Below are positions 30,634 to 55,700 of a DNA stretch of 64,000 bases, one piece after another. Within the stretch, counting starts at the first letter, position 1. Each line of letters starts with the position of its first letter. The notes under the pieces are model-generated. The model saw only the letters and a program-made list of their open reading frames with translations, was not told where the DNA came from and did no database searches. The stretch spans positions 10,478,001 through 10,542,000 of the forward strand of contig NC_135261.1 of the NCBI RefSeq assembly GCF_964204865.1. Direction: 5' to 3'. The position numbers were made by a program, and so were the translations under genes. The DNA is from Styela clava (lineage: Eukaryota).

Positions 30634-31593
<960 letters not shown>

Positions 31594-32663
31594 GATCAGA
31601 ATGCAGTACTATTTCATTCCAATGTGCCTTTATGCATAAATATAATTTAGTCTATTAGTCTTAGATATTAGAAGTAGATCGTTGTTTAAGTTTTGCAATT
31701 TTCTATACTAATAAATTCTAATTATGCTTGCATTATAAAACTGTCATCTACTGGTGTTATAACAACCGTTAGTTATATTTATTCAATCATGTTATGTGGT
31801 GCCATCATTGAAGCTGTATATTTATTTGTTAACTTATTATTATTGTCACTGAAGACCTTTTAATAAATAGTTGCTAAATTGTTTGTTTTCTATTACCTAC
31901 TATTGATGTTTTTTTCAGAATGATTTGTAAATTGTTAAGGCTGTGACATGGTCATACATTGAAAACCTACTTGAATTTGTCAAGGCAGTTATATTCGGAT
32001 CTGCTGATGTCAATTTTAGCAATCTCAGTGGTTCTCGAACTCATTTCCATCAATTATTTTTTGCGCCATGTTTAAAAATAATAAAGCCATGAAAGCAAGA
32101 AAATAAATGCATTTTGCCAAAGAATTAAACAAATCTAAGTCCAGGCTTTGTAATTTGATATAATCACAGCGAAGGTGCTTGCCTTTGAACACCAGAGAAT
32201 CTTATCGTACCCCCCCTCCTGAGAAACTCTGAGCTGGTTATTTATGCAATTCATATTCGGTATGAATATGAATCCACACACATAATGCTTATCTTATTTG
32301 ATATCGTCAATGCAAAACACAATATACGGTAATTGAACGTCTGCTTAGTGTAAGGCAGTACCATTATTTTAGTGGTAATATTACTGTTATACAGATCCAT
32401 TTGATAATCTTAAAATATATGTAAGTATTGTATCAATAAGTTTTTCCATAAGTGATTTCAGTGGGAGTAGTATATTCTTTGGTAGTTGCCAAATTGCAAT
32501 TTTTTTCTTCGCAAGTTCAAAGTTGCTGAAATCGTACTAGAATTGTTAGTTTTAGCTTCTGATATACACAATACTGCAATCAATACACATAATTTGTATC
32601 ATGTTTGTCTTAGGTTATGACCAAATAGCTTTATTTCCTAGTTATACAATATCTAATAAAATA

Positions 32664-33804: not shown

Positions 33805-36800
33805 TCATGTTAAAGTGTCTTCATTACGAAGATATTCTCCAATATCCGCTTGATGAAAAGCAATGATTGACATAGGATCCGCATGCCTGCATTCGGCTGT
33901 CGATTTTGCTGCTACACCAAATCCCTATAAAAGAAAGGCGATTACATGAAAAATCTTTAAACAATTAGTTCATGAGATATCCCAACAAAAATTGTCAATT
34001 TAGATGTTTTTTGAATAGCCTGCAATATAAAATACATAATGGATACAAATTCAGGAAAGCAAGAGACAAGTCTTTTTATTACACGTTATACCTTTACTAC
34101 TTACCAAAGGTATATCATTCATTGAATATAACACTATGCCTTGATATTTAGGAGTTCCTTCAGTAATTCTTCCTAATCCTGATTTTAATATGTGATTTCC
34201 ATATAAAAATGATTGTTCTGCACCTGGTTTCACCCAAACTTTGAACTGAAAAAGTAATTGACATTATTTGATATTCTCAAACAATGATGGTTATTATTGC
34301 ATTTGCACTTGTGTCAATTCTAATTATGCGGCATGTATGTATTGGTGTATGGACTATTAATCAACTACAATATTATTTTACATTTCTTTTTATGTTCAAC
34401 TTCAATTATTTTGCAATGTATGACTGTTGTGTAAATATTCTTCAAATAATAAGAACAGGCTTCATTATTCACAATACAGATGAAGTAATAAGCATTGTAG
34501 GAAATCAAGAGATGTATTGTGGCGTGGGTACTACACTCCTTGGAACAATGGGCCACAAAAATGTCAGGGCAATTGAGCTGAATCTAAATTCACACAATGG
34601 GAACAGAGTATCACAAGTGTTATGGATGTTTCTCCGGCCCTTGACCCCAGAAAAATTCTATATAACTTAGTAATTATCGCAAAATTTTGGATGCTTATTT
34701 TGTGAGTGTTTTGGAGAGTTGACACTTAGAAACTGATTTACATGATCAAACCCATTATTTTTATTAAAATATACAACCGCTTGCTCGGTTTAGCCTAGTC
34801 AATTGCAGCTTTTCCTGGACTAATTTTTGATTATTGCACAATCAAATCAAAAATTCCAATTGATACGTCATTGATGACTTTTGCTCCATGATACCTGCTT
34901 TTATCTCATAATCTTACCTTTGCATAAGGCGCTAAATAATCAAGTGCAGTGACATGGAGCCTAAATTTCTTTGTTTTTGTAAATTTTCCAAAGCACACGC
35001 CAAAGCTGATTAAATTTTCTCTGCAAACGTTAGTCGCTCTTTTCATAATTTCTTCAGATACATAATATACTCGATCTCTGTGAAGTCTGAAGCAGTATAC
35101 TCCATCTGGACGATCAATCAATAATTTGATGTTCTCCCCAATACTGAAACAATTAAAAATTTAAATGTCACATTTTTCGGAAGAATTGGGGTCTAACGAT
35201 GTATTTGTCATAAGGGCTTGAATGTCGCCAAAAGAAAATGTGATGTAAAAAATAAAAATAGCCTAAATTTTTTTAAAAGTCTGTCTCCCACAGAACGCTA
35301 TACCCTATTTGGCATGAGATAAACCTGCTTAGTTGAAAAATTTTGTTCAACTAAACGCATCTGTCAAGAACTTCATTTCACCCCAAACAGACAATTTTTT
35401 TTTTAAACAAACACACACATTACTTTTTTGTTTGGCGTTATTTTGAAGAGTTTCGGCATTTACTTAGCTAGACCCTAGAATTGGAATTGAGATCTTCAAT
35501 AGCCAGCTAAAATGCAATGTCTTTTATTGAGTGAAAATTCGAGCCACTCTCTGATTATGTCTTTGCTTGAAAGTATATTTAGAAGGTTACGAGTCGCAAA
35601 TGCCATTGCATCGGTCGTCAAAATTATCTCATCAGAGTCATTACCCGCAAGTTATTTGGAAAGTGGTATTCAAGTTTTATGTGAAATTATTTAAAAAAAA
35701 TTGTAGTAGAAGCAGTAGAAATAAAGTATCATAAAAGTTTCAGAGCAATAAAATTCTGTTGGCCATGATAAAAAAGAATGCAAACATGTAAGATGTCACA
35801 GTTATCATGATAGCTTAAGTAAATGTATAATGGTATTTAAGAGAGTTACAGCAAGAACTGAGAGTACCGGTGTTTGCCATTCTTTCTTCTGTATTCATAT
35901 AACTTTTGGAATAAGGTTGATATTGTTGCTTTGAGTAAACTTGCATAAAATGGGCTTCAAACATACAGGGTGACCCTACCAACACCTCGCCCCCACCCAG
36001 AAAAAAAAACAGAACCCGTATATTTTCTTTTTCGAACTTTTTTTCATTGTTTACGCTTGAAGTTCTGTTTGTGCATGTATTGTACCTAACAGAATGACAT
36101 ATCGCAATGACTGAGTAAGAAAAAATCATGTTGCTCTTTTGAAAAACGGTAACCCTGAAATTACGGGCCCAGTGAATTAAACGCTGTGACTGCTTATAGT
36201 GCCAAACAAAATTGTGACGAGAAAAAAACATCCAAACTTTTATTTTTTCTAGTAGAAATATGTCTCACAGGGAACACTATATCCTTTTTGCCATAGGAAA
36301 TACCTGCTTAGTTGAAATTGGGTAGGTTTGATTTTAACTAAATGCGTCTATGGCGAAAATTTCATTCTGCGCCTGACAGACTTTTATTTAATTATTAATA
36401 AAAAAACATAAAAATTTAGGATAGAATAATTTTTACATATTTATCCCATGGGAGAGGAATAAGACAGCTTAGCCATATGGCAAACCACGGCCTCTTGTCC
36501 GGTTACCATTCCATGTCGGGTATGGGATTAGTTAGTTATTTGTTTTCGGAAGCATGTACTTGATGGTGGAGGAAGCCGTGAACCACGCTACGGAGGCGAG
36601 AAGTCCAGCAATCCTCTCGCACATAACTATCCCTGCATGGGATTCGAACCCACGCAGAGTTATCCAGTAATCAGAGGTGCGGTGGCGAGGATATTAGGAT
36701 AGGATTTACATATTTATCCCGGAGGGAAGGAAAGCCAATATTAAAGCTTTTAAATCATATGGCGAACCACGGCCTCTCGTCTGGTTACCAGTCCAGGTCG

Positions 36801-37332
36801 GGTATGGGATTAGTTAGCCAGCTATTTGTTTTCGGAAGCATGGACTGGATGGTGGAGGATTGCCACCGCATCTCCGATTACCTCGCGTGGGTTCGCAGGC
36901 TTCCTCCACCATCAAGTCCATGCTTCCGAAAACAAATAACTGGCTAGCTAACTAATCGCATACCCGACCTGGACTGGTAACCGGACGAGAGGCCGTGGAG
37001 AGAGCGTATTCCTAACGCTTAGCAAGATGAGCCACACCACCCAATCGTCAAAATCGACTGTTCTACTGACTCAATACAGTAGTAATATAGGCCTACCACA
37101 GAAACAGAAAAATATTTCATGTTCCCGTTTTATTGTTTTAGTGAACTACCGGTACCGGTACCGGTATAGCCTAGTCTAATAGTCCACTCATGCTACACAA
37201 AACCTTCCGACCCTAACAATTCAGCAATACCAAGAATTAGAACATCATATATATAAATATCTTTATATGTACTTACTATTTTGCAAGTTTTTCAAACAAC
37301 GTTTTTGTCTCATCTTCTGTTAAAGGACGCAT
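33805..37332 (-). CDS. NIP7: 60S ribosome subunit biogenesis protein NIP7, 180 aa
   Basis: Exons 37332-37277, 35143-34918, 34245-34105, 33924-33805 total 543 nt. [49 protein letters not shown]...[16 protein letters not shown]. Confidence 0.97.
36417..36692 (-). mobile_element. tRNA-derived SINE copy in NIP7 intron 1
   Basis: Reverse complement of the 28413-28760 family, including GGGATTCGAACC (B-box on minus) and the TTTACATATTTATCCC tail. Confidence 0.85.
36696..37040 (-). mobile_element. Rearranged SINE copy with an internal inverted duplication
   Basis: Tail at 36696-36720 and head at ~37003-37040 are on minus, but 36861-36998 is SINE sequence in plus orientation. Confidence 0.8.
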
Positions 37333-37715
37333 AGTCAGTTTATTATTTGTCAGAGACGTTGAAACCGGGGCAAGACGTGAAGCTGTGCACGAAAATCAGA
37401 AAATATCACTGCCGCTACTCGCGAAACGTGTTTGTAGTAAATAGCTGGCTTCATTAGAATCTACTAAAATACTAAATCACGTATCACGTGGTCCGCTTTT
37501 TATAATATTTTGGTAAAGAGCTGATTTATGCGGGTTGCTTTTTTGCTTATTGTCGGGATGCCTTCGGTCCGTAATTTATTATCCCAGACGGTCAGCTAAA
37601 GTTTTTGTCTTGAAACGAAATCGGCTGTTTGTCTGCTTGTGGAGAATTATTTTCTGGAGCCATATATAATTGTTCAATTTGGTTTAGTTCAGTTTAATGA
37701 GAAATAATTTTGAAT
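37333..37715. promoter_or_regulatory. Bidirectional promoter NIP7 / EXOC1
   Basis: Only 383 bp between divergent ATGs; locally CpG-rich; E-box ATCACGTG at 37483 and CTCGCGAAA near 37418. Confidence 0.75.
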
Positions 37716-40700
37716 ATGACGGCGATAAAACACGCCTTGCAAAGGGATTTATTCACCCCAAATGATGAAAGATTGTTGGGCGTTGTTCACGTTGCTAAAA
37801 CGGGAAAGAAAAAGAAGTCATCTTTTTTATGTGCTTCAGGTTAGTAATCTATGCTATATGTATAAGGTATAGTATCCAAATGATATAAGGTGTTTTCGTG
37901 AAAGTTTTTTGTGTGTTTAGATCCTGAATACCACTTTTTGCTATAGAGTTTTGTCCTTTTGTCATTTTATTTACAAATACTGAAATTGCTAAATTACTGA
38001 AATTATGAATACCCGCTGCACTCTAATTCACAAGGCAAGCCTCTCCTTTTATGGTCACAAGTTTATTTTGATTCTTAAAAGTCTGAAAAAGCTAACGAAG
38101 ACTAGTTTTCCAGCTTTTTGATTGTACATTTTAGTTAAACCACTGGCACGGCCGCAAGGAATACACTCACCACCGGTACCTCTGATTACTCTGCATGGAT
38201 TCGCAGGCTCAAATCCCATGCGGGGATAGTTATGTGCGAGAGGATTGCTGGACTCCTCGCCACCGTACGGTGGTTCATGTAACCCCTGGTCGGTTACGGC
38301 TGCCTCCACCATCAAGTCCATGCTTCCGAAAACAAATAACCAACTATTCCCATGCCTGACATGAAATGGCAACCAGACGAGAGGCCGTGGTTCGCCATAT
38401 GGTTAAGCCTTCTTATCGCCTTTCCTCCCCTGGGATAAATATGTAAATCCCATCCTATTTTTCTATCAATCCAACTGAAGTTAATCATGCAATATTGAGC
38501 AATGTAATCATTGTAAACAGAGTATTGCTGATACGAACTAGTCAAAAAACATTACAGCATTAATTGAGAGTGAAACAAACATGACAAGTTTGATCGGGCT
38601 TCAAGCTTGGGGACCATTGTGATATTACATGTATATAATTTACGTAAAAAGTTAATATAAGTCAAGCTAATGTTTTTTACTTCCATGCATTCTTTAGCTA
38701 ATATTCAGAGTGGAATAATGACAGAATGGGTTGTCAAGGACACACTTGACAATGCCACGACAGTCAAACTGCAGGTTCAGAGGTTGGAATACTGTGTTGC
38801 ACAATCATAATATGTACTAATTGAGTATGATTCCTTTCACTATTCAAGACCATGTGTCTGAACCTTTCGATTAGTAATTTGATTTGTCAGTTGGTTCATC
38901 GTGCTTGAATCATGATTGCCATGCCACTGCTCATCACTCAGAGCCTTCATGGGGATAATTATGCAAGAGCAGATTTCTGACTGGTCTGTTGTTACTTTCT
39001 CCGCCATCCAAAAATAATTCCAGGTAGAGTAGGATTGGCCATATTGCTCATTGTTCTGTAAGAAACGATTGCTTACAAGTTATGCATGTGCCTTTAGAAG
39101 CAGTATATATAAAATTCTTATGGCCTGACGGTGTGGCACTTCATGCTGAGCCGAGGCATTGAGAAAACGCTTGCTACTGCACATCCGATTACCCTGCTTG
39201 GATTCGCAGTTTCGAATTCCGTGTGGGATTATCATGTGCGACGGGATTGTGGACTCTGCGCCACCTGGTTCACAGCTTCCTCGACCATGCATATAACTGT
39301 CCAACTAATCCCACACTCGAGGCCCTGATTCGGCATAGGATTAAGCTGTCCTATTGGCTTTCTCCTCCCCCAGGATAAATATGTAAATCTTATATATTGC
39401 TTGTAAATGAGGATCAAATAAATGAACCCTCTATGAGAGGTGATTGAAGAAATAACTAATTTTATTACATTTTACAATATTCAGGAAAATTTTAGTATTT
39501 CAGAATACTTGATTGCCAGAATTGTACTCAGATATGGGATTTCTAATAATTGTGTGTCCTGTTTCCACAAATTATTTATCAGTTTGAAATGTAATGTGTG
39601 ACGCCCAACCTCTGATACTGCTTATTCCCTATGCTAAATGTGATTCTAATCGTTATATGTTTTTGTGGCTTTCAACACTATTAATGCTTAAAACAAATTG
39701 TTCATATACTTAGTATTGTCTGCACACAGATTCATGTCCTAACACTGGCTGCTGTACGGTGATTGTTTTTTAGTAAGTAGAGATGTTTACTTTCTGATTG
39801 TGCCTACAGATAGTTGTTATTATAAGTTTAATTTGTAAAAGTTGGCGACATTGGACGATAAATATTTCTTTGTTAAGCATTATTCGAACACTGCCCCATT
39901 GTGACAGACAGGAATAACGAGTGTGTCGCAATTTATAGTATGATGTGGTGATTATTTGTACACGGCCCGCACGCTTCTGGGGATATGTATATTTGGCCCA
40001 CTAGTACATCAAGTTTACCTACCACTGGTCTAACTTCTTCAGGCTAATTGAAATGTAACCTGAACCTAAAAGCGGAATGACCAAACCAAATGAACTATGA
40101 TTTTCTGTGATATTCAGCATAACATGACTCTTTTACCGAAAATTGTTAGGAACCACCGGTCCATCACTACCAAATGCCTTCAAGTGTTGATATTTTAATA
40201 CCTGTATAATTTCAATAAAGAATAATTAAAAGCATGATTACACAACACACTTGCACGAATTTGAAACGAAATGTAAAAGGAAAAATAAATAATTGATAAA
40301 AAGATAGGGGCAAGACTTAAAATTGACTTACGGTAGGCAAGTATGTATAAAATGGTCACACAAATTCAGGGAAACTTCTGTTGACTCAATAAAAAATTGA
40401 CATAGCATAGTAAAATTTTGTAAAAGCTAAAATGAACGCTCTTAGATCTACTGTACAACAGAATTTATGATTGTGTATAAAACAGGTTGATACTAATCAT
40501 AACCCATCGTGTGCTTTAAAGTAAATCCTTGCCAGTTGCAGATAACTTCATTGTATAAGACTAAGAGGTTCGCTGGATTGCCTGGCATTGAAACATGGCA
40601 ATTTCCTCACTCTTCATGCTTGTTACTCATCTTCAGTACATTGTCGTTTTGATGGAAGGCCTATAGATAATAATATAATACTTTATGGATGAGATAGCAT

Positions 40701-43700
40701 ACCATTCTGAATAATCTCTTAGTGATGTAGACTGAATAATACCAGACTAGCAATGCTGGGTATGTTATGCAGGATGTCTCACATCTACGACCTATGGTAA
40801 TCAATACTATGTGTGAACTCATCTTTTTGTGCACATAAGCAACCTGAGTCTAGCAAAACATTTGATATATCCATCCATACCTACTCTATGCATTGATTTT
40901 AATAGGTTTGATAATTTCATGTCAAAGTTTTCAAGGCAGGCAGATACGAAATAATCTCTGACACACTCAAATATTATTATCCAAGTACATTGCGGTGCAT
41001 AATTCGGGGGAACAAATTTCAACGATAGTTCAACCAGAGGCTTCAAAAGAAATTGAACAATCATGCACTGGTTGTAACAAACTTATAAAAAAAAAGAATA
41101 TGTACCTTCTTCAATTTTAACTATATGGGCATCATGTGGAGGATAAATCTGTGTCTGACTTCTTTTTTTATAATCCATGTTATTGAATTTCTTTCTTATC
41201 GCCCGATGTAGTGTAGGGGAGTATCTTAATCCATTTTGACAAAGAACCGGGTACTCAGAGCATAGGTTAGTAACTGTACACTTTACTTCGTATTGGTCAG
41301 GATTTCGTCCGAGAACATTTTTGAGAATAGTTGAAATATCTCTCACTAATTCTTGGAATGCTTTTCTGTTCGTATTATTTAAGATGTCATATCCCTTTGA
41401 CATATATTCCCGTAGCGATACGTTTAAAGGAAAAGGCCAAGTTATACCATTAGGGTAAGGCAAAGGAGATGCATTTTTAGAAGCAAGATAGCTTTTCTTC
41501 TGGTTTTGGAAGGTCATTGTACTAGAGGTTTCAGGACCATCCGATACCTCATCATCAGGATTGGAATTATCATGCAGGTCAATGGGACTTTGTGATGTCA
41601 CATGGAGAGAATTCCAGTCTTTTAAAGCTGAGTAAAGCATTGTCCAACCATCCTCTCCTTCACTGCGAAGGCCTGGGTATTCAACACATAACATGGCTGC
41701 TGTATATCGTAAATCACCTTCTGATATATTTGGTCCAAGACTGTTTTTCAAAGTGTTATGAACTTCAGCCACAAGGCTGTTAAACACAGAATCATTTCGC
41801 TTAATACTGTTAATGCCCACTAAAGACTCTTTGAGAATTTGGCTTAGTGGGAAAGGTGATGTTATATTTCCAGGATAGGGAATGAAAAATGTATTAGGAC
41901 TTTTAGGGGACTTAGGTACGATCTTATTATGTATTGGTGAGGAAGGCCCAAATATAGATGAATTCGAGGATTCGGCTTCATCATCGGAAGATATTGGAAC
42001 AAGACCCTCGGGGGTTTGTGCATTTTTACGAAAGTAATTTGAAAACATATTCGGAGATGAAACTGAAGTAACTTTCTTAATGATGCACGGATCTCTTTCT
42101 TCTTGTATATTTTCATTAAGAATAGTCTTCGTTGTTCTTGCTTCCTACAAAAAAAAAATTTATTTTTTTGAGTGAGTGTATTGTCACCTTTCATGATGCA
42201 TATCTATATTGAAAAATATCATAATATAAAATTTATTTATGTTTCACAGCAGAATTCAATTTCCTCAATAAACTAAAATTGTTAAATCCAAGTAGAACAA
42301 GAAGATTAAGATAAATAAGCATTCTAGAAGCCCTGATGCCATACCTGTAATTTAGGAGGACTTCTCTTGAATGCTTTAAAAAATAACCACAATTCTTTTC
42401 TGATTCCAAAGCGAAATCCTCTGAATTCCTCATTCACATCTTCTCTAGTTAGTTGATCGATGTCATCCATTTGGAATTCAGCATCTTAGAAAAAAAGGTA
42501 GTTTGAAGTAGGAACTTAGGGAAATACCGTATTTTCAGGCTTATTGGGTGAAAATTACGGTAATTTTAGTATGACAAAAAATCAATATTTTGATATTGAA
42601 AGTACCTGTATATCATTATTGCGTTTATAAAAAACTTTTTCTGTTTTATAATATCAATCCAACCACCAAAGTAGGTAGCACATAATAACCATCATTTGGA
42701 AAATGTGAACCTACCTTCTATTGCCTTCACAATATCAGAGGTAAATTGTGTTGATGCTTTAGCTATCATCTCTGACAGGTTTGCAGACATTTTAACGAGT
42801 TTTGATTAAGAGTTTGAAAGCTGTTAAAGTAAAAGCGTTGTGTCATTTGATGAAATTGTTGATTTAAAAAAATGTTATCATTGTTAATTTTCAAAATACT
42901 CAATTTAACCCCAACTGTATTTAATGACATAGACTACTCAAAATATGGTCATGGGCTTTTAATATCCACATGTTTTTTAATAGAACTAGTAAGCTCTTAA
43001 ATATCTTCCCAAAAACCATCCTAACCTGACAAGCTGAGCAGTAACAAGTGAATAATGAGATTTTCATATTTATTCCTGTGAGAGGAAAGTTGATTAATCA
43101 TAGGCGGATATTATGAACCGGCCTTTCGCCCGATTACGAGTTCCATTTGGGGTATGGACTCTTTCAGTCCCATACCAATCAGCCGATGCTGCATGACACA
43201 TACATATATCAGTAACTTCCTAAGTTGTTAGCAAAGACAGAAATTCGGTCTTTTAGAAGTGCTTCAACGTACTTATCAGTATATTTGACAACCATCGCAC
43301 CACTGGTACCCTTAATACTCCACCGTAGTCATTTATTCGACAGTTAGGACGCAATATTCCGCTTCCATTTAGTAAACACAACCCCCATATACTGTTAAAG
43401 CATAGGACGTCTGTGTTTACAACGGGGTCGAACTAATTAATCACGTGCTTGTTCCGCCCGAAGTGCTTCTGTTTCACGACGCTCCGCTAACGCGATATTT
43501 CGCAGAATTACGCTACAAATTGCAACTTGCTTGTTTTTTTATATTGCAATATTCAAATGCAATTTTACAACCTAGTTTTGATTAAACTACAGTACCGGTT
43601 AGTATATTACGTTCTAAGCTGAGAGATATGTTGAAAATGACCCCCGATTGGATGAAATATTTCATACAATGGCGACTAAATAGTTTAAAACTATGTGCTT

Positions 43701-46700
43701 GATTGTCACTGCTAGGCATTGGCTTTCACAGCATGATATACTGAGGTGACAAATTATGCTATTCTTTTAATTAAAATGGGTAAAGATCAAACGAAATACG
43801 GCGCCTTTTCCCGCGATTAGCAGGCAATCAAGGCTCGCAGTTTATCTGCCGAACAGCATTGTGGGAACCTTTTTTCTCTCTGTCTAGCGTGCGTCGCGCT
43901 AGCGCTATCGCCATTTTCAGCGTGTATTTTTGTGTGGCTTAGTTGCGCGCGCGTTTGTGATTGTGATTTTGTAGTTTTACTTTTGTCAGTGTCATTTTGT
44001 TCATGTCTTGAATTTATTGTATATTAAGGTCGATTTATTTAGCGATATGACTGACGGTGTTGATATAGATCTTTATGCAGACGTTGACCACGAATTTGCT
44101 CAGGACGACGGACTGTATACCCAGGGCAACGTGGATTTGTATGATGATATGTTGCAACCGTCGAGCAGAGCGACCATCCATTCTAACGGCATGCACAGCG
44201 TTCAACATGGAAGCGATAAGACCCAGGGGGATATGAAGTTTAATTACCAGGGCAAAAAGGTGTCCATTTATGTTGGAAATTTAACTTGGTGGACTACTGA
44301 CAAAGATCTGCAAGATGAAATCAGTGCTTTGGGTGTCAATGATTTAATTGAAATAAAATTTCATGAAAACAGGGCAAATGGCCAGTCAAAGGGTTTTGCA
44401 ATTGTGCATCTTGCTTCTGAGTCTTCATCTAGAATAGTTATGGATAAGTTGCCAGGGAAAGAGTTACATGGCCAAACTCCTGTTGTTACACCATGTAATC
44501 GCCAAAGTTTAAATCAATTTGAACAACAGTCCAAAGCACAATCTGGAAATAGTGGTGGTCCGCCACCACAAAAGCCGGCATCACCACCGCCACTCCAACT
44601 GCCACCAAGGCCTTCTCTTTCTGTGAGCTCTTTCAATGTTGTTCATCAAGCACCACCAGCTCTGGCTGTTGCAAGTTTAGGACCTCCTGCCTCAACAGCA
44701 CCGACATCAGCTCTTTTTATGCCTCCGCGCAATCGTCTGGTCCTTCCATTCCCTCCTCCAGCAGCTGCAGGTAACAGACCACCTGCTATTTTTATTCCAC
44801 CAACTAGCGTAGCCATTGCTCCACCTTCTTCGATTCCCCCTCCTGGAATGACACTGCCACCTACTCTAATGCCACCCAGAGTGGCACTGCCACCAGGTAT
44901 GCCAGGACCGCCGCCTCCAGGCTTACCGACACTTATTCGTGGCCCTGGTGGTATCCTAATTGATCCAAGAATTCCACCTCCACGACCAATGATGCCACCA
45001 ATATCTCCAAATCAGCCACCACCTGCCGTAAGGCCACCACATATTGGTGCACCCCCATTAGGGCCTCCCCCAGGGTTCCCACCCCCACCGGTACAAATTA
45101 ACCCCTTGATTCCACCTCCTGCTGCAGAATTGCCACCAGCTCAAGAGACATACAGACAGGAGCGCTCACAATCGCCGCCATTATCAGATACTGAAGTGGA
45201 AGAAATAATGAATAGGAATAGAGCAGTTTCAAGTAGCGCAATTTCACGAGCTGTTTCCGATGCAAGCGCTGGTGATTATGGAAGTGCAATTGAAACTTTA
45301 GTCACTGCCATATCTTTGATAAAACAATCTAAAGTTGCTACAGATGAAAGAGCGAAAGTATTGATTGGATCATTACAAGATTGCCTACATGGCGTGGAAG
45401 AGAAATCATTTGGATCTGGATCGATAAGAAAAAGAGATCGATCGAGGGATAGAGATCGAGAAGAAAGACCAAGACATCGGGAGTCGAAGTCGAGGAGACG
45501 AGACAGAGACAGAGATCGTGACAGAGACAGATCCCGAAGCAGAGAGAGATATGACGATCGAGAATACAGAGAAAGAAGTCGAGAACGAGACAGCGGAGGG
45601 TATTCATCATCACGTCACTCGGATCGTCACCGACGTTGAAATGAATTACATTACAAAAACTGGATGCTTTATTGCATTGTACAGAAAACAATAGTTGTTG
45701 CTTTTAGCACCAAATCTGAAATGGTCGGTTTCGAGAATGTAAAGTGGATGCTGATGAACTATGTCTACAAGTCATTGATACAATTCCACATTTTTCAATG
45801 ATTAATTGTGTATAAATTGATACTTCATTACTGTTGGAATGTATCTTAATAAAATTCAAAATGGTTTTATGATTGGTTTCTATTTATCCTATTATACAAT
45901 TGCAAGGGGGTTATTCATTTTACTGTCTCATTTTATCTAGCATATTTTCATGTCATTATGTCGGTACGTCTTTGAAATAGGGTCTTTCTCAGTGCGATAT
46001 GTCAACAGTTGTGGGTTATTAGAAGGGTTAGTTTAAGTTGGGGCTAATCATGAAATGTGTATATAAGGATTCAGAGTCTTATCAATTTTAATAGTATATA
46101 TAATTTCGGGAATTCATCATGCAATGGTTAAAAGTGAAAGTGCTTTGTTCAAAAATGGTGTAAAATTGTCGATTATGTCATTTATTTATTTTCGCATGGC
46201 ATATATGTGGCGTGATTCCATGATGGTATCAATCATTGAAGAATGCTGCCAAAAATTGTAACACTGTGGATTTTTAAGGTTGGTAATTTTTTATGCAATC
46301 ATTTAAGTGCAACTTTTGCCTCTGTTTTTATTTATGCAATATTTTTGTGTCTATTCTGTACTGTTCTGGGTATGTCATTTTCGGCCAGTGTCCACTCTTT
46401 GACACTTGGCTCGAAATGTGGAACCCAAATATATTTTTTTCCTTTCTGAATAATTGCCATTATCGGAATTTTTAATAATTTAATATGATGTGGTGCAAAA
46501 TTTCTCAACCTTTTTTTTTTCAATTTCCGAACGCTGCTTGACCTCTTCTTCATACAGTTAACAGGATAATACAGTTTGAATGAATTGAAATGTTTTAAAG
46601 GTGTCAATGATGCACATTTTTTTAGTGGGAAAATTCTTGCACAATAATCAATATTAGGAATTCTGATGATGTCATTTATTGGTTAAATTACCGTTTTAAG

Positions 46701-49700
46701 ATACTATACTTTATAAATAACATTTCTAAAGTCATTTCCAAAATCCTCAACACCATTATTTGGGTTGGTGGTCAAGGAAGACTTTCAAAAGTGTAATGGT
46801 GCTTGTATCATTTACTCCTGAAATCGACCCTCAATTACTTTTGAATATTGTAAAATAGCAGCTGTAATTTCAAAATTCAAATTAGTTCACTTTATTTCGT
46901 TCAGGTAGGCTAATTCATTGGTCGAGAAGGTGATGGTGTAGTGATGAGTGTAAATAGAAAAATTGTATTTTTTCTTTGTATGAATTATTTATATCTTCAA
47001 AATATCTGATTACCAGTAAGAGAACTTGTCTATTATTTATGAATGTTGGCAGATTAATTGGCTGCCTTTTCTTTAATAATAATTTCATTTTCAGAATTCT
47101 CTTTTCAAATGCGGTTTTCTGTATTTGTATAGGCAAGAGTATAGTAGTGCTCTTATGGTAGTAACGTTCATTTAGATCATGTATTTTTGATTCACCACTA
47201 AAAAGGATTTTGTTTGGTGCTAGCTTACTTATTTTTGTGCACCATGAGTTGCGTCCTTGGTTTTGAGACACTGTTGACCCTGTTGACCTAGATTTAAACC
47301 CCAGATCTATAGACATCACATACTGGGTATATATATGGTTTGTGGCAATTTTGATTGCTCACATTTGAGACGTCGTTTCATGAACTAATAATACTCAAAT
47401 CTGGTGATACTGAATTCCTAACATATATCATATTTTCCTGCTAATAAGCTGATTTTTTGGACCCAATTTTTTTGTCTGATTTTCTTGGATTGACTTGTTG
47501 CACTGATGGCCTTGACTGTTTTTTTTCTCTCGAACCGGCTTATTATAAACTTCGGGCCAGAAAATACTGGAAACTCACAAACAGTGGATAAAAGTACCAG
47601 TGAGGCGGTAACACATTTATAAGCCTCTGCTTATTGGGTGGTAATACTAATATGTTATAAATTGGCTTCAGCACATACGCCGTGTCATCTTATTTGCTGG
47701 AAAATATGTATTTGTATGTCTAGTTGCGAGTTATTATTGCAGAGTGGCTGACGGGATAGGTTTTATACTTTTAATTTCCATCACATTTATATCACTGCCA
47801 GCATGAAACTTCTTTTAGAAAGTAGGCCTATTTAACAATTTGTAGGCACTTTTTTTTGTATGGTAATTATTCAGAGTAGAAGCTTGATCATGATATTTTC
47901 CATATTTTACTCGGATGAAATCTTGAGAATTATAGATTTTTTGCAGTCAAAATCAAAGTATTTCGGTCTTTGGTTTTGTGTGTCTATTAGTGTGAATCGT
48001 TAATTCATTTTTTGAAAATGATTTCCAATGTTAGCCCAAGACAAAAATTTAATCCAAACGAAATTCAATCGAAATTAGGAGTCTTTTAAATTTTATTATT
48101 TACGTAATGTGATATATACTTGTTTCCGGGTGGGTTTTTCGGACACCATTTTATGTCAGCAAATATTCGTGCAGTTCGTATCAAAATTCTGAAGCAGATA
48201 TATTGCAATATAGCACTAACATATAATACAGTTTTCACTAGTTTCTATGTATCTGTAAAATAGGAATTGTTCCAGCAAATTAACTTTCATGCATGTGCTC
48301 TATTCCATCTAAAAGTGGCCATAGTTCCAGCTGATTTATGATTTTATGTTATTATTGTTAATTAATATTATAGCTCGACCGATATCGAATTTTGAAGCCG
48401 ATATCGCCAACTGGTGGCTGATAACCGATATCACAATGCCGATATTATTAAAAATCATATTTTGAGCCACGCTCTTATGATGCACCTTGTGAGTTTGTAG
48501 TTTCATTTTGATATTTGTTATCATGGCAGTAACACTTTTATTTAACTAACTTTAGTTAATGCTCGAACAAATGTTTTTTCTGTAACTTTTCTTGCTACTT
48601 CAATATCAGACTAGCTATTTCCAGGAAAATGAATTGTTAATCAGACGTTTTTACATATAACTATGGATATATGTCAAGGGTGATAAAAAATTATAGCGTG
48701 ATATATTTTAAAGTGAATCGTGATAATGATCTTTCGATATTGTGATAGCCTATGTGCAGTTACATGTGAAATTTTTAATAACTTTGTTTCCAGAGACTCT
48801 CAATACCTTATTTAGTCAATAATAATGGATGAAGTTTTTATTTTGTAATTTTCAGCAAAATGATAAACAACCATCAATATAGACAAAACTGTTACCCCAG
48901 AAATTCAAAATTGATTTGGGGAGGTCACAAATTCGGAACTGACATTATTGCTTTGAGCTACCTGTACCATGTTTCCATGATCACTAACTCACCAGCTTCC
49001 AATCGATTCTATTTATAGAACCACCGTTTAATACTGTTACTAAATTTCCCTTTTTCTCATTGTGTACTCTCTCAAATATGTCACTTTATAAAAGTCATTG
49101 TTACTCCAGATAATAACTTTTCAGTTATGACCATGCATGAAATGGCTAATCATAAGACACTGGGAATTAGGAGAGACACCTTTATAACGCAAAATGAGAG
49201 CGAGAGAAATATTGGCAAACCAGTTACGCAGGGCCGTTGCAGCACGCAGCCCGGCGCTTGCCGAGCATGGCCGATATATATCGGCGGTTTACGTCCGATA
49301 TGATATATCGGCAAACACGCAATATTGGCCCGATATATCGGTTGGCCGATATATCAGTCGAGCTCTAATTAATATATTTTTATTAAACCAACTTGGTAAT
49401 ATATTGTCTACCTGTAGATATTGCTTTCATTCTTTCTCTTCCTGAGAACTTTGAAGTTGAAATTTTCAGAATTAAATTTTTAGTCCAGTTCACCCGTAGT
49501 GAGCGTGTTATAGCCAGGACTGGGAGCTAGGTTCCAGCTCCATCGTGACTCTACCTTCGCAACTTATTGCTTCAGCTTCGTAGTCATAATGAGTTTTTTG
49601 GTATAACGATGGTATGCGACATTATCGCAGTTGCGCAGAATCGGAACTCAAAACTATTATGATACAAGGGTTTTGAATTTTAAAATTAAATCCTGAATAC

Positions 49701-52700
49701 ACAAATTTACTATTTCAAATTAATATTAGAAATTAAAATTAAACAAAAAATGATAAGCTGAAAAAGTTAAATTGCATTATTTGTGTCAAGTAATAAAAAA
49801 TTCATGCATAGGAAAAAATAGATTGTTAATTATCTGGAGCCACTAAAATTTTTGGTAGCTGAAGCTCTATCCAGTATAGTAAGCTTGTCTCCACCCCTCA
49901 ATATAATGTTACAACTCCAGCTTCCAGCCCTGGTTATAACGAAGGATTTGGATGTACCGGTACATGGGACCATAAAGGGAATTCCAGTAAAACAACTTCG
50001 ATACAAATAGCTTAACCATTTTACTACTGAAAATTTTCAGTAAAATGACTAGATAATATAATTTTTTGCATGAGCTGTTTTGTAATATTGGTACATCATT
50101 GTTAATATTAGTAATTGCAGCTTTTTTGGCATAAAAATTATAGTAGATGCTAATGCGGTGGTTCTCAACCTTAACAGTATTGCCCTATTCATGTCAAAAC
50201 TGTATCCATGTCATCATTGTTAATATTAGTAATTGCAGCTTTTTTGGCATAAAAATTATAGTAGATGCTAATGCGGTGGTTCTCAACCTTAACAGTATTG
50301 CCCTATTCATGTGTCGTTAACTAAATATATTCATGTCCATTGAGCTGACATACCTATAAAAAAGTATGTGTCATCATTTTGATGCAAAAGACTTCGGAAA
50401 CATTAAATTTGTGTAACATTGTCAAGACATTTAATGAAATTTAGAAATGCATCTCTTATTAATTCCTATAAGATCCTGTTTATCCTCTTATTTCATGTTT
50501 CTATGTTCCATCACTTCCTCATATCAAAGATTCTGAAAGGTTGAGAACCATTTGGCTGATACATGTGAATATATGTACCGGTATAAAAATATAAAGTAAT
50601 AATACATTGACTAATATCTGTGGATAATAGATTGAGATGTTCTATATACGGTAGTTTTATTGTTTTGAAAGGCTCATTTTTCTTGGCTTTGTTTCATATA
50701 ATGTTCTCCCCGAAATTTAGTTTTTAAAAGGATATCATCATTTGAAAGCAAATATACAAATTTATCTGTTTTATATACATTAGTTACAGTTACTCAGTCA
50801 GAATTCCTTTATAAAATAGTTATCTTGGAGAGCTGAACTGATAATTTCAATTAGTAATTTTTTTTCCCTTTTGGATCGGAAATTTCTTGTTCAAGCTGAA
50901 TAAATCTTACTTACTTCTTGCTTGCGTGGCATAATTGCTGGAATACTTTATTTCGTACCTGTACTGTTGTTGTGTGAGATTGTTTCACTTTTTATATTGT
51001 CTTTAACCCTTTGTTCTGCTTCCCACCAATATATAGATAACTTAAAACGATTGGGCAGATGTTAAATATAAATGTGGTCTTTAAGTTCTGAATTTTACTG
51101 TTTAGCTATTGTATTTTACCAGAGTTGTTTTGCATATTAGTATCTTTTCACCAACTATGGCTTGGGTTACAAGGATACTTATTAAATAAAGAATTACCCA
51201 CTTATTACAATTTTATGATTTTTTTGTTGCCGATTTTTTGGTGACATCTAGGCAAAAAAAGGATAGAGTGCATAATTAGTGTGTGCTCTTTTCTTTACAA
51301 TACTGTTTTGAAGTGCTTTTCAGAAAGTGGTTGTGCGTCCTTCTTCTCTGTGTGTTTATTTTATGTAATTTTTAAACTAAGTTGACTAAATTGAGTTTAA
51401 ATTGAACCACTGTGCCCCCATTTTGTACTTTTATATTTTACTTTATAATTATGTGCCTACAGAATTTATTTACTTATATAGCAGAGCTGTCTGCAAACAG
51501 CATCACAAGCCAGTCAATACAAGTTAGTTTAAACTTATTTGAGCAGCAAATTGTTTCTGTGGCCTGGTGTAGCCAAACTTATTGATGGTATGAAAAATGA
51601 GTGTGTGATAAATAGAAGAGAGATTGTTTTGTGGTATATCTGTAACTTTGTATGAATGGATGCATTTGGAGTTGTGTCATATTTGATCTGTAACTTTTAA
51701 ATTATACAATATATAGCACTCAAATTTTAAAATTATGTCTTCCCACCTTTTTCAGTAACGACAGAGCACCCTGTTGAGGTCTACATTACCAAAATCAAGA
51801 AACAGGACAAGGGAGACTTGTATAAGAGACAGAAAAAATGGCACCTAAGAGAACTGAAAATGGTCGATGGCAAGGATTCAAAAAAGGTAGGTGACATTAT
51901 TTTAAATATTCCTGCTTAGTGCGGACTGCGGAGATGTACAAAGAAATTTGAAAAGTATATATTATTGATCACAAAATAGACCTATGAGTTGTTGTTGTTA
52001 ATGATCAGAAAAATTGCTAGAAGGCTATTACGTATAATTCTTTTCAAGTTACCACATATCCCCACATGAAAGCTGACCTCGCATATAACACAACCACGAA
52101 AACGGCCTTAAAACAACGAATTTATAAAAATTCGCATATAAGCCGACCCTACGAATCGTAACACGCCGGACGCCAGTGGCTAAATCAACATCTCTTTCTT
52201 TTCTCTGTCTTTTCTTTTGAAGATACCATTGGTGGCAACTTCACACCATCTGCAGTGCAATTGAGCACTACTGTAAAATGTTTTTTTTAAGCCCTGTTGA
52301 TAAAGACTATTTTTCACCTTCTGGGTTTAATGTTTTATTGCTTAGCTTCCCAAAACACATTAGGGTTTCGTCTATATTGCCTATTCTATTGAAAGGGAAA
52401 TTATCATTCTTTCGTTTATTTATCACGTAATGTTGAAAGTTCATCACCTTTTCCTGAAATTCTGATGGCAGCTCTTAGTTTTTGGTTTTAGTGAAATCCC
52501 ATTTCTCCTCAAAAACTTTGTACACCAACCCTTGGAAGCAGTGAAGGTTGAGGTGTCTTGGTATTTTCCAGATTTGGCCATCTGCAATGTTTGCAACTGC
52601 ACTGCACTTTCCCATTTCATGGGAAACTTCATCATTGGACGCTTTGTGAGGGGTTGTCAAGAGTTTAAACATTCTGTATTGCTTGCTCTCTACGTTCTTT

Positions 52701-55700
52701 TTAGTGCAGTTTGGTCCTTGAAATTACAGATTTAAATGGTTACAAAAATGTCTGACAAGTAAACCAGTCTTATGATAAATCCCTCGTCCTCCATTTTGAA
52801 AATCTTGATCCTTCATCGATAAAAACCCAAGTAGTTCATCTCTCAATTGAAGAAGATGTTTTGTTGTATTCCCCCTGGGTAGCTAGTGCACCTCTTGTGT
52901 GATAGAGAAGACAAGTGTGATCAGAGCCGAGATCTTCACAGATCAGCCAAAACAAGCGACTGGAGCTGACGTTTTGACGAAATTTATTATTTTTGTAATT
53001 TGGTTCAAGCATGATAACAACTTCGGTGGGAGTACCTTAGCGCTAAGGGAGAATCTGTGTATTGTGTAACAGTGTACACAGGTGAAGTTTGGTTACACAG
53101 CTTTCACATGGGCTTAAAATCCAGACTTCCGACCAAGCATAGTCGGAGCCCCATCTGTCGTGCACCCGATTAAGTTTTCCCCAATCCAGTTCATTCAGCT
53201 TAAAGAAATTTTCTAAAACTCTGGAAGATAATATTATTTTCGCAGCGGTTATAGGATAGTAAAACGCCAGCACTTTGAAACGATGTCATTTCACGCATAT
53301 ATCATTTCCCTGTGAATAACGAGGTCAATGTTGTATTCATAATGTTTTCGTTTTGTATGAAACAATGCAAACTATGCATCAAGCTGGGAGTTACGATCAC
53401 GTAACAAGTTTGTTTTTACGCCTCACAATCTCGCTGTTGAAAGCAAAAGAGAAAATATAGCAAGAACAACGAAAAATTTCCCTTTATAATTCGCATCCGT
53501 TTTTGTGCACATCATTTGCTGGGAAACACTTACAAACATGGAAAGAAAACAACCTCGAACTGAGTTTGACGCCGATGAAGCATTGCTGCGTATTTTGGAA
53601 GAGTCTGATATAGATGACGAGAATTTTGATAAAAGCGATAGTTCAATGTCTGAAGTAGAGCAAGATTCAGGTATGGAAGTTTTCTGTATTCAAAAATTTT
53701 GATGCTTGATAAAAATCTTAAATGTCATTTTCAAATTTAGAGTCTGAGGAAGATTTCTCATTGGCCGATGTTCCTTCGACGTCAACGAGCGTGCCGCAGT
53801 GTAAGCGGTCAAGGCGACGTCAAAGACCTGAGTTGCAGTTGGCTGACGTCTCTTCACCCGGCGAGTCTATGCCAACACCTTTAGCAAACCAGAGATCTCG
53901 TCAACGGGCGAGAACGCCTTTGCAGTCAGAATACGAGTGACAAAAAGTTCCGCCAAAAAGAACTATACGCCAGTTCGGTGGTGCGCCTGTTGTCAGCATC
54001 GGAATATGTCGGCCACTCCATCTCCGCTAGATTGTTTTATTCAATTTTTTACGGTTCAAGTCATCAATTTTATAGTGGAGATGACAAACCTGAATGCCCA
54101 AAAAAAGCTTCAAGGTATGAGAAAATATATATAAAAGTATAGGCCTATATTTGTTTATAATTTATTTCAACTTCATGTTCAACATAAAAGACGATAACGT
54201 AGTTGATAAAAGCAAAATAAATAGAATTGATTACAGCATTGTTTCCAATTCTAATCTTTATGTTTTCTTTTTCAGTCACCATCGCTCACCGTGCCACTCG
54301 CCAACTTCCTCCAATGAAGTTTGAGCCAGCGACCTTCGAAGAGAAGAAGACATTTTTTGGCCTTACGAAACTGCCAGTTATTGCCATGTATTGGCAAAGG
54401 AAACACTGGATATTCGAAGTCCCGTCATTCAGCAAGATCATGCCGAGGGATCGATATCATGATCTACTGAAATTCCTACATTTCTGCAATGAAGATTATG
54501 CTCCGTCACGAGACAACCCGGCAAGAGATAAACTCTACAAAATAAGACCTCTCTTGAACTTACTCGAAACGAGGATGCTTACAGGACGTATTGGATTCTG
54601 CCAATTTATTCGTTCCAAAAGGACTCGTTTTGGAATGAAAGTGTGGGTATTGGCGGAATCCAAAACAGGGTATATTTCTTGTAGACAGTTGTATACGGGT
54701 AAAAGCGCTGGAGCGGCGCCGGAGGCGGGCCAAGCTACTCGAGTGGTGAACGATCTGATAACATCTTCATTATATCTAGTTTAGTTGTGCGTAGGAATAC
54801 AAGTTTGGAATTGTCTGGAAGATGACGTGTTGCTCGTTCACGAGAGTATTCTCTATCTCTTTTATCTAACGTGTGCTTACCACAGTGTGGAGAGTAAGAA
54901 AACTTTTTCTCAAAATTTTTTGAAAATTCTCTCTTACAACAGGCATACGGAATCGAGATTATAGCGACGCGTATCGCGCGAGGGAACAGGCATACGGAAT
55001 CGAAATTATAGCGACGCGTATCGAGGGTTGGCGAAAAGCCGCGAAAACTAGCCTTCCATTGGTTCATAGGAAAATTTGTGGCACTTTTGGTTAACTATTT
55101 ATTACATATTATAAAAGGGGTATAAAAAGTCCCTTAGGACCAGCGAAAAAAAAGTTGAGCAAAATTTTGTCTTCAAGAGTATGGGAGTTATAAAATACAG
55201 CTTTAGCTTTGACTCCCCGCCCTCACTTATATTTCGGTACCGATACTCATCCTTCTTGTTTTTTATATATTTGAATATTGCTGTATTATTATTGATTATA
55301 TCAATATTTTTAGTAAATATTAAAATGGTATTCATTATATTCGACAAACTTTGTGTATGCTTCTTCCGTAACATTAAATTATTTCACAGGATTCCACAGA
55401 TTTCGATCTTCTCTTCGACAAGAATTTCAAATGGTTTGCAAGCAGTGTGAGCGAGAAACACACTTTTCTATCATGCTTGTGGAAGGTTTGTTGATATTTA
55501 TTCCAATTATTAATGATGTATTTGTCACCTGTTGTGCTCTAGAAACGCTTTAGACAAGAAATGCGCTAATGTGCCACTATCCTTCTTCGAACCAAAATAA
55601 TAACTTACTTCCGAAATGTTGGAAATTATGGAAGTTTTTGTGAATTTGCTTCATTCATAACAGAAGTTTTTTTCACACATTTTTAACCATATATATATAT

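What the first reader, a model, noticed from the sequence alone, without database searches (positions are those of the whole stretch)
37840..51755. Divergent gene pair nested in EXOC1 intron 1, including a same-strand intronless CPSF6
Seen: EXOC1 exon 1 (ends 37839) and exon 2 (starts 51756) splice in frame ([14 protein letters not shown]) across 13.9 kb that contains a complete CPSF6 on the same strand and an antisense gene, with a CpG-rich region between them. Established: nested genes are more often antisense, and CPSF6/CFIm68 controls poly(A) site choice. Inference: every EXOC1 transcript must read through the CPSF6 promoter and poly(A) site, so CFIm level could set intronic termination of its own host gene, coupling the two. 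With NIP7 this makes four genes on two back-to-back bidirectional promoters within 7 kb.
Basis: partly seen in the sequence, partly recalled or inferred. Interest (0 to 1): 0.75.

Follow-up and report, generated by a model that had tools for sequence, protein, structure and literature searches.

The report
CPSF6 gene nested in EXOC1 intron
In this sea squirt genome the only gene for the polyadenylation factor CPSF6 lies, without introns and with its own two-way promoter, inside the first intron of the exocyst gene EXOC1; the layout is real but of a known kind, and the proposed regulatory link between the two genes remains untested.

Summary
EXOC1 exon 1 (ATG 37716, ends 37839) and exon 2 (starts 51756) have canonical GT/AG sites and join in frame. 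They align side by side to a single-exon paralogue of the same genome. Exon 1 is unique in the genome.

The 13,916-base intron holds the genome's only CPSF6 gene (530 aa, intronless, + strand). It also holds a five-exon antisense gene, Styela clava LOC120329417.

RNA-like contigs from three studies show the two nested genes with separate 5' ends about 240 bases apart, in a CpG-rich gap. No splice from upstream and no spliced leader was seen. CPSF6 therefore has its own bidirectional promoter.

The predicted poly(A) signal exists (AATAAA at 45848). CPSF6 contigs run through it in 3 of 3 RNA-like runs, for at least 1 kb.

The 37839>51756 junction could not be checked. The CFIm–EXOC1 coupling is untested.

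The closest known case is mouse H13/Mcts2. This scan has noted other same-strand nested intronless genes elsewhere in this genome, but not this pair.

Verdict: a new member of a known kind, of moderate to low interest.

The parts
37277..37332 (-). NIP7 exon 1 coding part ([19 protein letters not shown]), head-to-head with EXOC1
   Evidence: Read. Downstream NIP7 exons carry Pfam pre-PUA_NIP7 (34909-35121, E 9.5e-18) and UPF0113 PUA (34054-34233, E 4.1e-10).
37000..37750 (.). CpG-rich NIP7/EXOC1 divergent promoter region; the two ATGs are 384 bases apart
   Evidence: CpG o/e 1.2-1.4. No RNA was laid here.
37716..37839 (+). EXOC1 exon 1, coding part (41 codons plus 1 base), GT donor at 37840
   Evidence: In one search, 27 of 27 short database proteins matched at 64-80% identity; none was fetched.
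37840..51755 (+). EXOC1 intron 1, 13,916 bases, host of the nested pair
   Evidence: CpG o/e is mostly 0.3-0.8 outside the nested promoter.
38100..39395 (.). SINE-like repeat copies, inverted relative to copies in NIP7 intron 1 (36420-37000)
   Evidence: for example arms 36459-36586 and 38289-38416, 128 nt, 87% complementary.
40537..43690 (-). Antisense nested gene (Styela clava LOC120329417, 427 aa). Exons: 43690-43273 (5' UTR), 42820-42715, 42484-42344, 42143-41106, and 40660 to at most 40537. The CDS runs from 42790 to the stop at 40623.
   Evidence: Joints with CT..AC ends in RNA-like contigs. The loose end was located at 40630-40659. P0001 is 98% identical and matches the exon model. No Pfam domain. 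15 relatives at E<=1e-3, P0001 itself included.
43691..43926 (.). Gap between the two nested 5' ends: core of a bidirectional, CpG-rich promoter
   Evidence: Zero depth in the 43700-43899 bin in 3 of 3 RNA-like runs, while the DNA-like run covers it. CpG o/e 1.2-1.4.
43927..46899 (+). CPSF6 transcribed region as seen in contigs. It is unspliced and continues beyond the stretch that was laid.
   Evidence: X6 contig 43927-46899 plus 632 further letters; X5 44003-46899 plus 1,501 further letters; X1 44003-46487, then 46512-46899 plus 1,130 further letters.
44047..45639 (+). CPSF6 (CFIm68) ORF, 530 aa, intronless, the only copy in the genome
   Evidence: Pfam RRM_1 and RSLD_CPSF6. One match among 10 scored candidates in the 377-Mb genome. 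675 homologues, including named tunicate CPSF6 proteins.
45848..45853 (+). AATAAA, candidate proximal poly(A) signal of CPSF6, read through by contigs
   Evidence: 2 TGTA in the 100 bases upstream (intron background 0.65 per 100), and no further AATAAA or ATTAAA on the + strand until 48447; contigs pass it in 3 of 3 RNA-like runs.
48367..49369 (.). Dispersed repeat with terminal inverted repeats (MITE-like) in the intron
   Evidence: Inverted arms 48367-48385 and 49351-49369. At least 40 copies across the genome at 71-93% identity.
50094..50312 (.). Two identical 101-base direct repeat copies, 118 bases apart start to start
   Evidence: family D1.
51756..51886 (+). EXOC1 exon 2 (Sec3 PH domain, first part)
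55390..55494 (+). EXOC1 exon 3 region (Sec3 PH domain, second part)
   Evidence: profile positions 52-86. Exact exon bounds were not determined.

Best explanation
This is a genuine host/nested gene arrangement in a sea squirt (Styela clava by the name on P0001). EXOC1 starts at a CpG-rich promoter shared head-to-head with NIP7. Its first intron (13.9 kb, the largest in the window) contains a second, self-contained divergent gene pair. One member is the genome's single, intronless CPSF6 on the host's strand. The other is a five-exon lineage-restricted gene (LOC120329417) on the other strand. Both are driven from a roughly 240-base CpG-rich bidirectional promoter. CPSF6 is made as its own unspliced mRNA from that promoter. 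It is not cut out of the EXOC1 pre-mRNA. Its transcripts extend well past the first AATAAA, either as a long 3' UTR or through leaky termination. EXOC1 expression needs polymerase from the upstream promoter to cross the nested promoter and the CPSF6 3'-end signals, after which the whole 13.9 kb is spliced out. Shown: gene identities, exon structure of the nested genes, separate 5' ends, single-copy status. Inferred: that exon 1 is spliced to exon 2 in vivo; that CPSF6 became intronless by retroposition or cDNA-mediated intron loss; and that any cross-talk is generic transcriptional interference rather than a CFIm-specific loop.
For: Exon 1 and exon 2 have canonical in-frame splice sites. Exons 1 and 2 align to adjacent segments (10-52 and 56-97) of a single-exon Sec3-PH paralogue. 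Exon 2 and exon 3 carry the Sec3-PIP2_bind profile from position 11 on, so the start of the domain must be encoded upstream. Exon 1 is unique in the genome. CPSF6 has RRM plus RSLD domains, a single genomic match and named tunicate orthologues. RNA-like contigs from 3 studies cover CPSF6 without any joint. They start at 43927 (X6) or 44003 (X1, X5), and no loose end is reported at either 5' end (the X1 and X5 records end exactly at 44003). The antisense gene shows three CT..AC joints (seen in 1, 2 and 2 of the 3 RNA-like runs) and a 5' exon reaching 43690. Three intron or intergenic bins have zero depth in all 3 RNA-like runs but are covered in the DNA-like run, which has depth in 30 of 30 bins. 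There is a CpG o/e peak of 1.1-1.4 at 43000-44250. P0001, named Styela clava LOC120329417, reproduces the exon model.
Against: No RNA with the 37839>51756 junction was seen; the one read-laying run could not span it. Contigs cannot give strand, true ends or levels, so the coverage from 45870 to at least 46899 could partly come from another overlapping transcript. The DNA-like run may be the sample the assembly came from, and it tests only 6 of the 13.9 kb for misassembly. No related genome could be examined, so the age and origin of the nesting are unknown. No poly(A) tract or target-site duplication marks CPSF6 as a retrocopy (reading).
Confidence: 0.8

Rival explanations
1. The level of CFIm (CPSF6 protein) decides whether EXOC1 polymerases terminate at the nested CPSF6 poly(A) site, so CPSF6 dosage sets EXOC1 output.
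For: The geometry permits it: same strand, and an AATAAA at 45848 with 2 TGTA in the 100 bases upstream against an intron background of 0.65 per 100. That CFIm binds UGUA and shifts poly(A) site choice is established knowledge (recalled, not from a call).
Against: The site is passed by CPSF6's own contigs in 3 of 3 RNA-like runs, so it looks weak or optional. No contig joins EXOC1 exon 1 to the CPSF6 region; the only loose end in an RNA-like run lies at 41105. Two TGTA motifs are a trivial enrichment. In H13/Mcts2 the host terminates upstream of the nested promoter and does not need the poly(A) signal (PMC13309782 abstract). Nothing was perturbed here.
Confidence: 0.06
2. Generic transcriptional interference of the H13/Mcts2 type. 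Firing of the nested bidirectional promoter blocks or terminates a share of EXOC1 polymerases inside intron 1, whatever protein the nested gene encodes.
For: The same ingredients are present as in the mouse case: an intronless nested gene, sense-sense orientation, and an active CpG-island-like promoter inside a host intron (PMC13309782 abstract and passages). Five + strand AATAAA lie upstream of the nested promoter, at 39417, 40214, 40284, 40388 and 42267.
Against: No truncated host transcript was seen. EXOC1 and CPSF6 are both expected to be broadly needed housekeeping genes (an inference), so strong interference would be costly.
Confidence: 0.2
3. Operon-like expression. CPSF6 is made from the EXOC1 pre-mRNA and released by spliced-leader trans-splicing, as earlier agents proposed for other same-strand nested intronless genes of this genome.
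For: A plausible acceptor (ttttacttttgtcag) ends at 43989, just upstream of the ATG. Tunicate operons are rich in single-exon genes (PMC2760879, section 10). Scan notes s1-817497 and s1-812122 describe such cases (unchecked).
Against: The X6 contig runs unbroken across that acceptor from 43927. No leader-like loose end appears at any CPSF6 5' end. The intron upstream has zero depth. There is a CpG-rich divergent promoter with a partner gene. CPSF6 lies 6.2 kb after exon 1, far above the under-100-base spacing used to define Ciona operons.
Confidence: 0.04
4. Artefact. The nesting results from a misassembly, or from assigning the wrong first exon to EXOC1.
For: The junction was not seen in RNA. 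Only 6 kb of the intron was checked against a DNA-like run, which may not be independent.
Against: Exon 1 is the only sequence in 377 Mb that encodes the missing N-terminal part. It is colinear with exon 2 on a paralogue. It sits at a CpG-rich promoter. DNA-like contigs tile 40900-46899. The published description of this species says its genes tend to have one large intron (PMC7540406, passage).
Confidence: 0.05

Closest known systems
Mouse H13/Mcts2 host/nested pair (PMC13309782; abstract and passages read)
   Same: An intronless gene with its own CpG-island promoter sits inside an intron of a multi-exon host in sense-sense orientation. The host must transcribe through it.
   Different: Mcts2 is a retrocopy whose parent, Mcts1, still exists, and it is imprinted. 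Here CPSF6 is the only copy, is paired with a divergent partner gene, and no truncated host isoform has been shown. Imprinting is not at issue.
Mammalian host/nested gene pairs in general (PMC11694760; abstract and section 5 read)
   Same: The nested genes lie wholly within one intron, which is the first and the largest, as is the rule in that catalogue.
   Different: The taxon is different (a tunicate). Two nested genes form their own bidirectional unit. The nested gene is an essential single-copy RNA-processing factor rather than a young duplicate.
Ciona operons resolved by spliced-leader trans-splicing (PMC2760879; abstract and section 10 read)
   Same: Same-strand neighbours in a tunicate, one of them a single-exon gene.
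   Different: The spacing is kilobases, not under 100 bases. CPSF6 has its own 5' end and promoter and no leader was seen. The gene is nested, not abutted.
Other same-strand nested intronless genes noted by this scan in the same genome (s1-817497 ADAT2 in GLO1, s1-812122 IBA57 in CDC123, s1-822906 ERCC1 in PCNP)
   Same: A sole-copy, intronless gene on the host's strand inside a host intron, in the same genome.
   Different: Those were read as promoter-sharing or leader-dependent. This one has a separate CpG-rich bidirectional promoter. Those notes were not checked here.

Membership tests
Host/nested gene pair (nested gene wholly inside a host intron) | Host exons lie on both sides of the nested gene and belong to one transcript | tested here: met
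   Exons 1 and 2 have canonical in-frame sites, are colinear on a paralogue, and exon 1 is unique. The RNA junction itself was not seen.
Host/nested gene pair (nested gene wholly inside a host intron) | The nested gene is a separate transcription unit | tested here: met
   Contig 5' ends at 43927 and 44003, no upstream joint or loose end, and zero depth upstream in 3 of 3 RNA-like runs.
Host/nested gene pair (nested gene wholly inside a host intron) | The host is transcribed across the nested gene | not tested
Contigs carry no strand information.
CPSF6/CFIm68 | N-terminal RRM, proline-rich middle and C-terminal RS-like domain | tested here: met
   Pfam RRM_1 (E 5.8e-9) and RSLD_CPSF6 (E 5.4e-36). 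The proline-rich middle is visible in the ORF. Named CPSF6 homologues.
EXOC1/Sec3 | N-terminal PIP2-binding PH domain followed by the Sec3 coiled coil | tested here: met
   Sec3-PIP2_bind in exons 2 and 3. Sec3_CC in exons at 57648-57839 (E 4.2e-8) and 57903-58049 (E 7.8e-4). The rest of the gene lies beyond the window.
Ciona-type operon | Same-strand genes less than 100 bases apart | tested here: not met
   It is 6.2 kb from the exon 1 donor to the CPSF6 ATG and 6.1 kb from the CPSF6 stop to exon 2. The definition is from PMC2760879, section 10.
Ciona-type operon | Downstream gene's mRNA begins with the spliced leader at an acceptor | tested here: inconclusive
   No loose end at the CPSF6 5' ends, and the X6 contig crosses the candidate acceptor. 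Contigs can miss a 16-base leader or a minor form.
Retrogene | Intronless copy with an intron-bearing parent elsewhere | tested here: not met
   Only one CPSF6 match in the genome. Replacement of the parent, or intron loss in place, remains possible.
Retrogene | Poly(A) remnant and target-site duplications | tested here: not met
   None is visible by reading. An old insertion would have lost them.
H13/Mcts2-type interference | Host transcripts polyadenylated in the intron upstream of the active nested promoter | not tested
Candidate AATAAA sites are listed.

The most novel reading that the evidence does not exclude
The sole CFIm68 gene of this animal sits in the path of EXOC1 transcription and has leaky 3'-end signals of its own. 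CFIm abundance would then tune how many polymerases, from either promoter, terminate in the intron or run on to EXOC1 exon 2. That would be a feedback sensor of 3'-end-processing capacity built into a host gene. A variant of this reading has read-through from the CPSF6 promoter contributing to transcription of the EXOC1 body.
Probability: 0.06. Interest if true: 0.6.

Novelty: new member of a known kind. Interest (0 to 1): 0.3.

Why it matters
The locus is a clean natural case of an essential single-copy gene for an RNA 3'-end factor lying in sense orientation inside another essential gene's first intron, with RNA evidence that it runs from its own bidirectional promoter. Ascidian embryos are open to knock-down and reporter work. 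The locus could therefore serve to test, outside mammals and without imprinting, whether sense-sense nested transcription costs the host anything. As it stands it adds one more documented nested pair to a genome and a literature that already hold many. It answers no open question.

Tried and rejected
**Exon 1 on its own.** It gave nothing in PDB, in Pfam at E<=10 or in the ESM Atlas named clusters. Exon 2 gave nothing in PDB.

**Search for a short expressed fragment spanning the junction.** I used the last homologous-protein search on exon 1 for this. It returned 27 unnamed 44-72-aa proteins at 64-80% identity, none identical to the window. Such hits may derive from human or other vertebrate DNA in public samples and carry no reference name. 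I therefore did not fetch or use them, and the junction stayed unchecked.

**Synteny in other tunicates.** This could not be tested.

**Identity of the antisense gene.**
- Pfam found nothing for exon 4 or for the whole P0001.
- The Atlas feature hits (SAM, DUF4769; score 0.92) are leads only, and the structure hits all have TM below 0.25.
- HMMER against 1.84 billion representatives found 15 proteins at E<=1e-3 including P0001 itself; the best relative, P0149, scored 8e-32.
- Of the 8 relatives I scanned out of those 15, 7 had no Pfam family. One (P0150) had a sub-threshold FLYWCH match.
- I did not fold the protein.

**End of the X5 contig.** I first thought its end near 48,400 was a de Bruijn break at the dispersed repeat that starts at 48367. 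The other copies are only 71-93% identical, so that explanation is uncertain and I leave the true 3' end open.

**Literature.**
- (CPSF6 + EXOC1): 3 papers, none about gene arrangement by title.
- (CPSF6/intronless/ascidian): 76 papers, 10 listed, none relevant by title.
- (ascidian/nested/intron/operon/intronless): 49 papers, 12 listed, none on ascidian nested genes.
- These three searches are my only basis for saying the pair is not in print.

**Supplements.** Supplementary tables are closed. Table S11 and Figure S2 of PMC7540406 (intron-less genes) and the operon lists of PMC2760879 may bear on how common such genes are. I could not see them.

**Joined models.** The joined EXOC1 and antisense spliced models were not built. 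Exons were searched one by one, and the database protein P0001 stood in for the whole antisense protein.

Full report
**What is in the sequence**

The window is G000:C16:10478001-10542000 of a 377-Mb assembly. EXOC1 exon 1 begins with the ATG at 37716 and ends at 37839, before a GT donor. After a polypyrimidine tract and the AG at 51754-51755, exon 2 starts at 51756. The split codon g|ta keeps the frame...[14 protein letters not shown]. The intron is 13,916 bases.

Exon 2 matches Pfam Sec3-PIP2_bind positions 17-53 of 87 (E 9.9e-9). Later exons in the window match Sec3_CC.

A profile scan of the whole genome finds three places. Two are exon 2 (profile 11-59) and exon 3 (window 55390-55494, profile 52-86). 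The third is a single-exon 205-aa ORF 2.4 Mb away on the same contig (L002 7535-8152). By its Sec3-type PH domain and its length it resembles amisyn/STXBP6; that name is recalled and was not tested.

That paralogue gives an internal ruler. Exon 1 residues 4-39 align to its residues 10-52 (E 7e-8). Exon 2 residues 1-42 align to its residues 56-97 (E 5e-7). The two exons therefore encode adjacent parts of one domain although they lie 13.9 kb apart.

The exon 1 peptide has no other match in the genome except a weak one (E 0.7) to that paralogue. There is therefore no alternative first exon nearer to exon 2. Exon 1 alone gave nothing in PDB, Pfam or the Atlas.

**The nested genes**

The ORF 44047-45639 (+) encodes 530 aa with RRM_1 and RSLD_CPSF6. 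It is the only CPSF6-like match in the genome, one match among 10 scored candidates. It has 675 homologues at E<=1e-10, including proteins named CPSF6 from Clavelina, Ciona and Phallusia.

On the other strand lies a five-exon gene. Its largest exon finds one protein, P0001, at 98% identity. P0001 is named "uncharacterized protein LOC120329417, Styela clava" and has 427 aa. Its sequence reproduces my exon joins, including the C-terminal ...KIEEG|[11 protein letters not shown]. That name is my only evidence for the species.

This gene has no Pfam domain. It has a handful of relatives: 15 at E<=1e-3 including itself, the best at 8e-32. The Atlas gave only leads to SAM/DUF4769 proteins.

NIP7 is confirmed on the minus strand. 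Exon 1 was read, and the pre-PUA_NIP7 and UPF0113 exons were found. Its ATG lies 384 bases from the EXOC1 ATG.

**RNA evidence**

The look-up of sequencing runs gave nine contig sets of 53-79 million letters, guessed to be RNA, and four of 333-739 million letters, which are genome-sized. I laid X1, X5 and X6 (three studies) and X10 on 40900-46899.

X10 has depth in 30 of 30 bins. X1, X5 and X6 have zero depth in 42500-42699, 42900-43099 and 43700-43899. They also carry joints with CT..AC ends at 42143>42344 (1 of 3 runs), 42484>42715 (2 of 3) and 42820>43273 (2 of 3). They therefore behave as transcriptomes and X10 as DNA. This remains an inference from the pattern, because the record does not state the library type.

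- **Antisense gene.** Its 5' exon reaches 43690 (X6). An X1 loose end at 41105 maps to 40630-40659, which defines a last intron at 40661-41105.
- **CPSF6.** It is covered without any joint from 43927 (X6) or 44003 (X1, X5). Those contig ends carry no extra letters, so neither an upstream exon nor a spliced leader was seen.
- **Distance between the 5' ends.** The two 5' ends are 236 bases apart.

CpG observed/expected is 1.1-1.4 over 43000-44250 and 1.2-1.4 over 37000-37750. It is 0.3-0.8 in most of the rest of the intron.

**The 3' end**

AATAAA at 45848 has 2 TGTA in the preceding 100 bases (intron mean 0.65 per 100) and a G+T-rich downstream stretch. Even so, contigs pass it in 3 of 3 RNA-like runs:
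- X1 runs to 46487. After a polymorphic T-run it continues in a second contig, which has 1,130 letters beyond 46899.
- X5 has 1,501 further letters beyond 46899.
- X6 has 632 further letters beyond 46899.

On the + strand there is no AATAAA or ATTAAA between 45848 and 48447. A dispersed inverted-repeat element with at least 40 copies begins at 48367.

I read this as a long or alternative CPSF6 3' UTR. Contigs cannot show strand, ends or levels, and I could not see where the unlaid letters lie. The upstream part of the intron has no such coverage, which argues against retained EXOC1 intron as the source.

**How it most likely works**

EXOC1 and CPSF6 are separate transcription units. EXOC1 polymerases start at the NIP7/EXOC1 promoter, cross the antisense gene, the nested promoter and CPSF6, and the whole 13.9 kb is removed by splicing. 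CPSF6 and LOC120329417 fire divergently from their own promoter.

CPSF6's lack of introns may reflect retroposition next to an existing CpG promoter, followed by loss of the parent copy. That retrocopies can recruit bidirectional CpG promoters is recalled knowledge, not a result of any call. Alternatively the introns were lost in place. No poly(A) remnant, target-site duplication or parent copy is present, so this stays open.

**The proposed coupling**

Nothing here tests it. Three points count against its specifics:
- The candidate site is leaky even for CPSF6's own RNA.
- No contig joins exon 1 to the CPSF6 region.
- In the one dissected sense-sense case, mouse H13/Mcts2, host termination is driven by the act of nested transcription and persists when the intronic poly(A) signal is deleted (PMC13309782; abstract and passages).

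That catalogue also reports a preference for the first and largest intron, as seen here (PMC11694760, section 5).

**Relation to tunicate operons**

Ciona operons were defined as same-strand genes less than 100 bases apart and are rich in single-exon genes (PMC2760879, section 10). This locus fails the spacing criterion and shows an independent promoter.

Earlier notes of this scan list other same-strand nested intronless genes in this genome: ADAT2 in GLO1, IBA57 in CDC123, and ERCC1 in PCNP. They were read there as promoter-sharing or leader-dependent. I did not check them. They suggest the layout is common in this genome.

The species' genome paper says its genes tend to have one large intron. 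It also says it has fewer intron-less genes than the species it was compared with (PMC7540406, passage; its supplements were not seen).

**Novelty**

Three literature searches found no report of this pair. It is a new member of a known kind. The nesting is well supported and the nested promoter is shown. The host junction, the synteny in other tunicates and any regulatory link are left open.

Noticed in passing
window 30640-31593 and 32601-33710 (+): Two more conserved genes appear as single uninterrupted ORFs about 1 kb apart. One is a GDP-fucose-synthase-like epimerase (Pfam Epimerase, E 4.3e-50). The other is PEX13 (Peroxin-13_N plus SH3). Whether they are sole copies, or nested or operonic, was not checked.
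   Followed up: partly
L002 7535-8152 (-) = G000:C16:12947535-12948152: A single-exon 205-aa ORF carries a full Sec3-type PH domain (profile positions 1-87, E 3.1e-14) and a helical tail. It resembles amisyn/STXBP6; that name is recalled and was not tested. I used it as a ruler for EXOC1 exons 1 and 2.
   Followed up: partly
window 54227-54784 (+): A piggyBac-type transposase fragment (Pfam DDE_Tnp_1_7, E 1.2e-20) lies in EXOC1 intron 2.
   Followed up: no
window 24974-27188 (-): Two overlapping long ORFs (513 and 300 aa) look like a frameshifted transposase-derived gene by eye. They were not scanned against Pfam.
   Followed up: no
window 36420-37000 versus 38100-38465 and 39130-39395: SINE-like repeat copies flank the NIP7/EXOC1 promoter in inverted orientation, for example 128-nt arms 87% complementary.
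   Followed up: no
window 42791-42838, 43954 and 43994: There are length polymorphisms between runs around the nested promoter. The DNA-like run X10 skips 46 bases at 42791-42838. The X6 CPSF6 contig lacks 13 bases at 43954 and 1 base at 43994. P0001 also lacks three residues (TPE) that are present in the window's exon 4.
   Followed up: no
window 45848-48447 (+): This is a 2.6-kb AT-rich stretch with no AATAAA or ATTAAA on the sense strand. By a rough composition estimate of my own, not a shuffle test, a few would be expected. The depletion fits selection on a long 3' UTR but is not significant on its own.
   Followed up: partly
window 5872-6987 (+), 10130-10717 (-), 15910-16365 (-): These are long ORFs with a seven-helix-receptor look and a leucine-rich-repeat look. 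None was tested.
   Followed up: no
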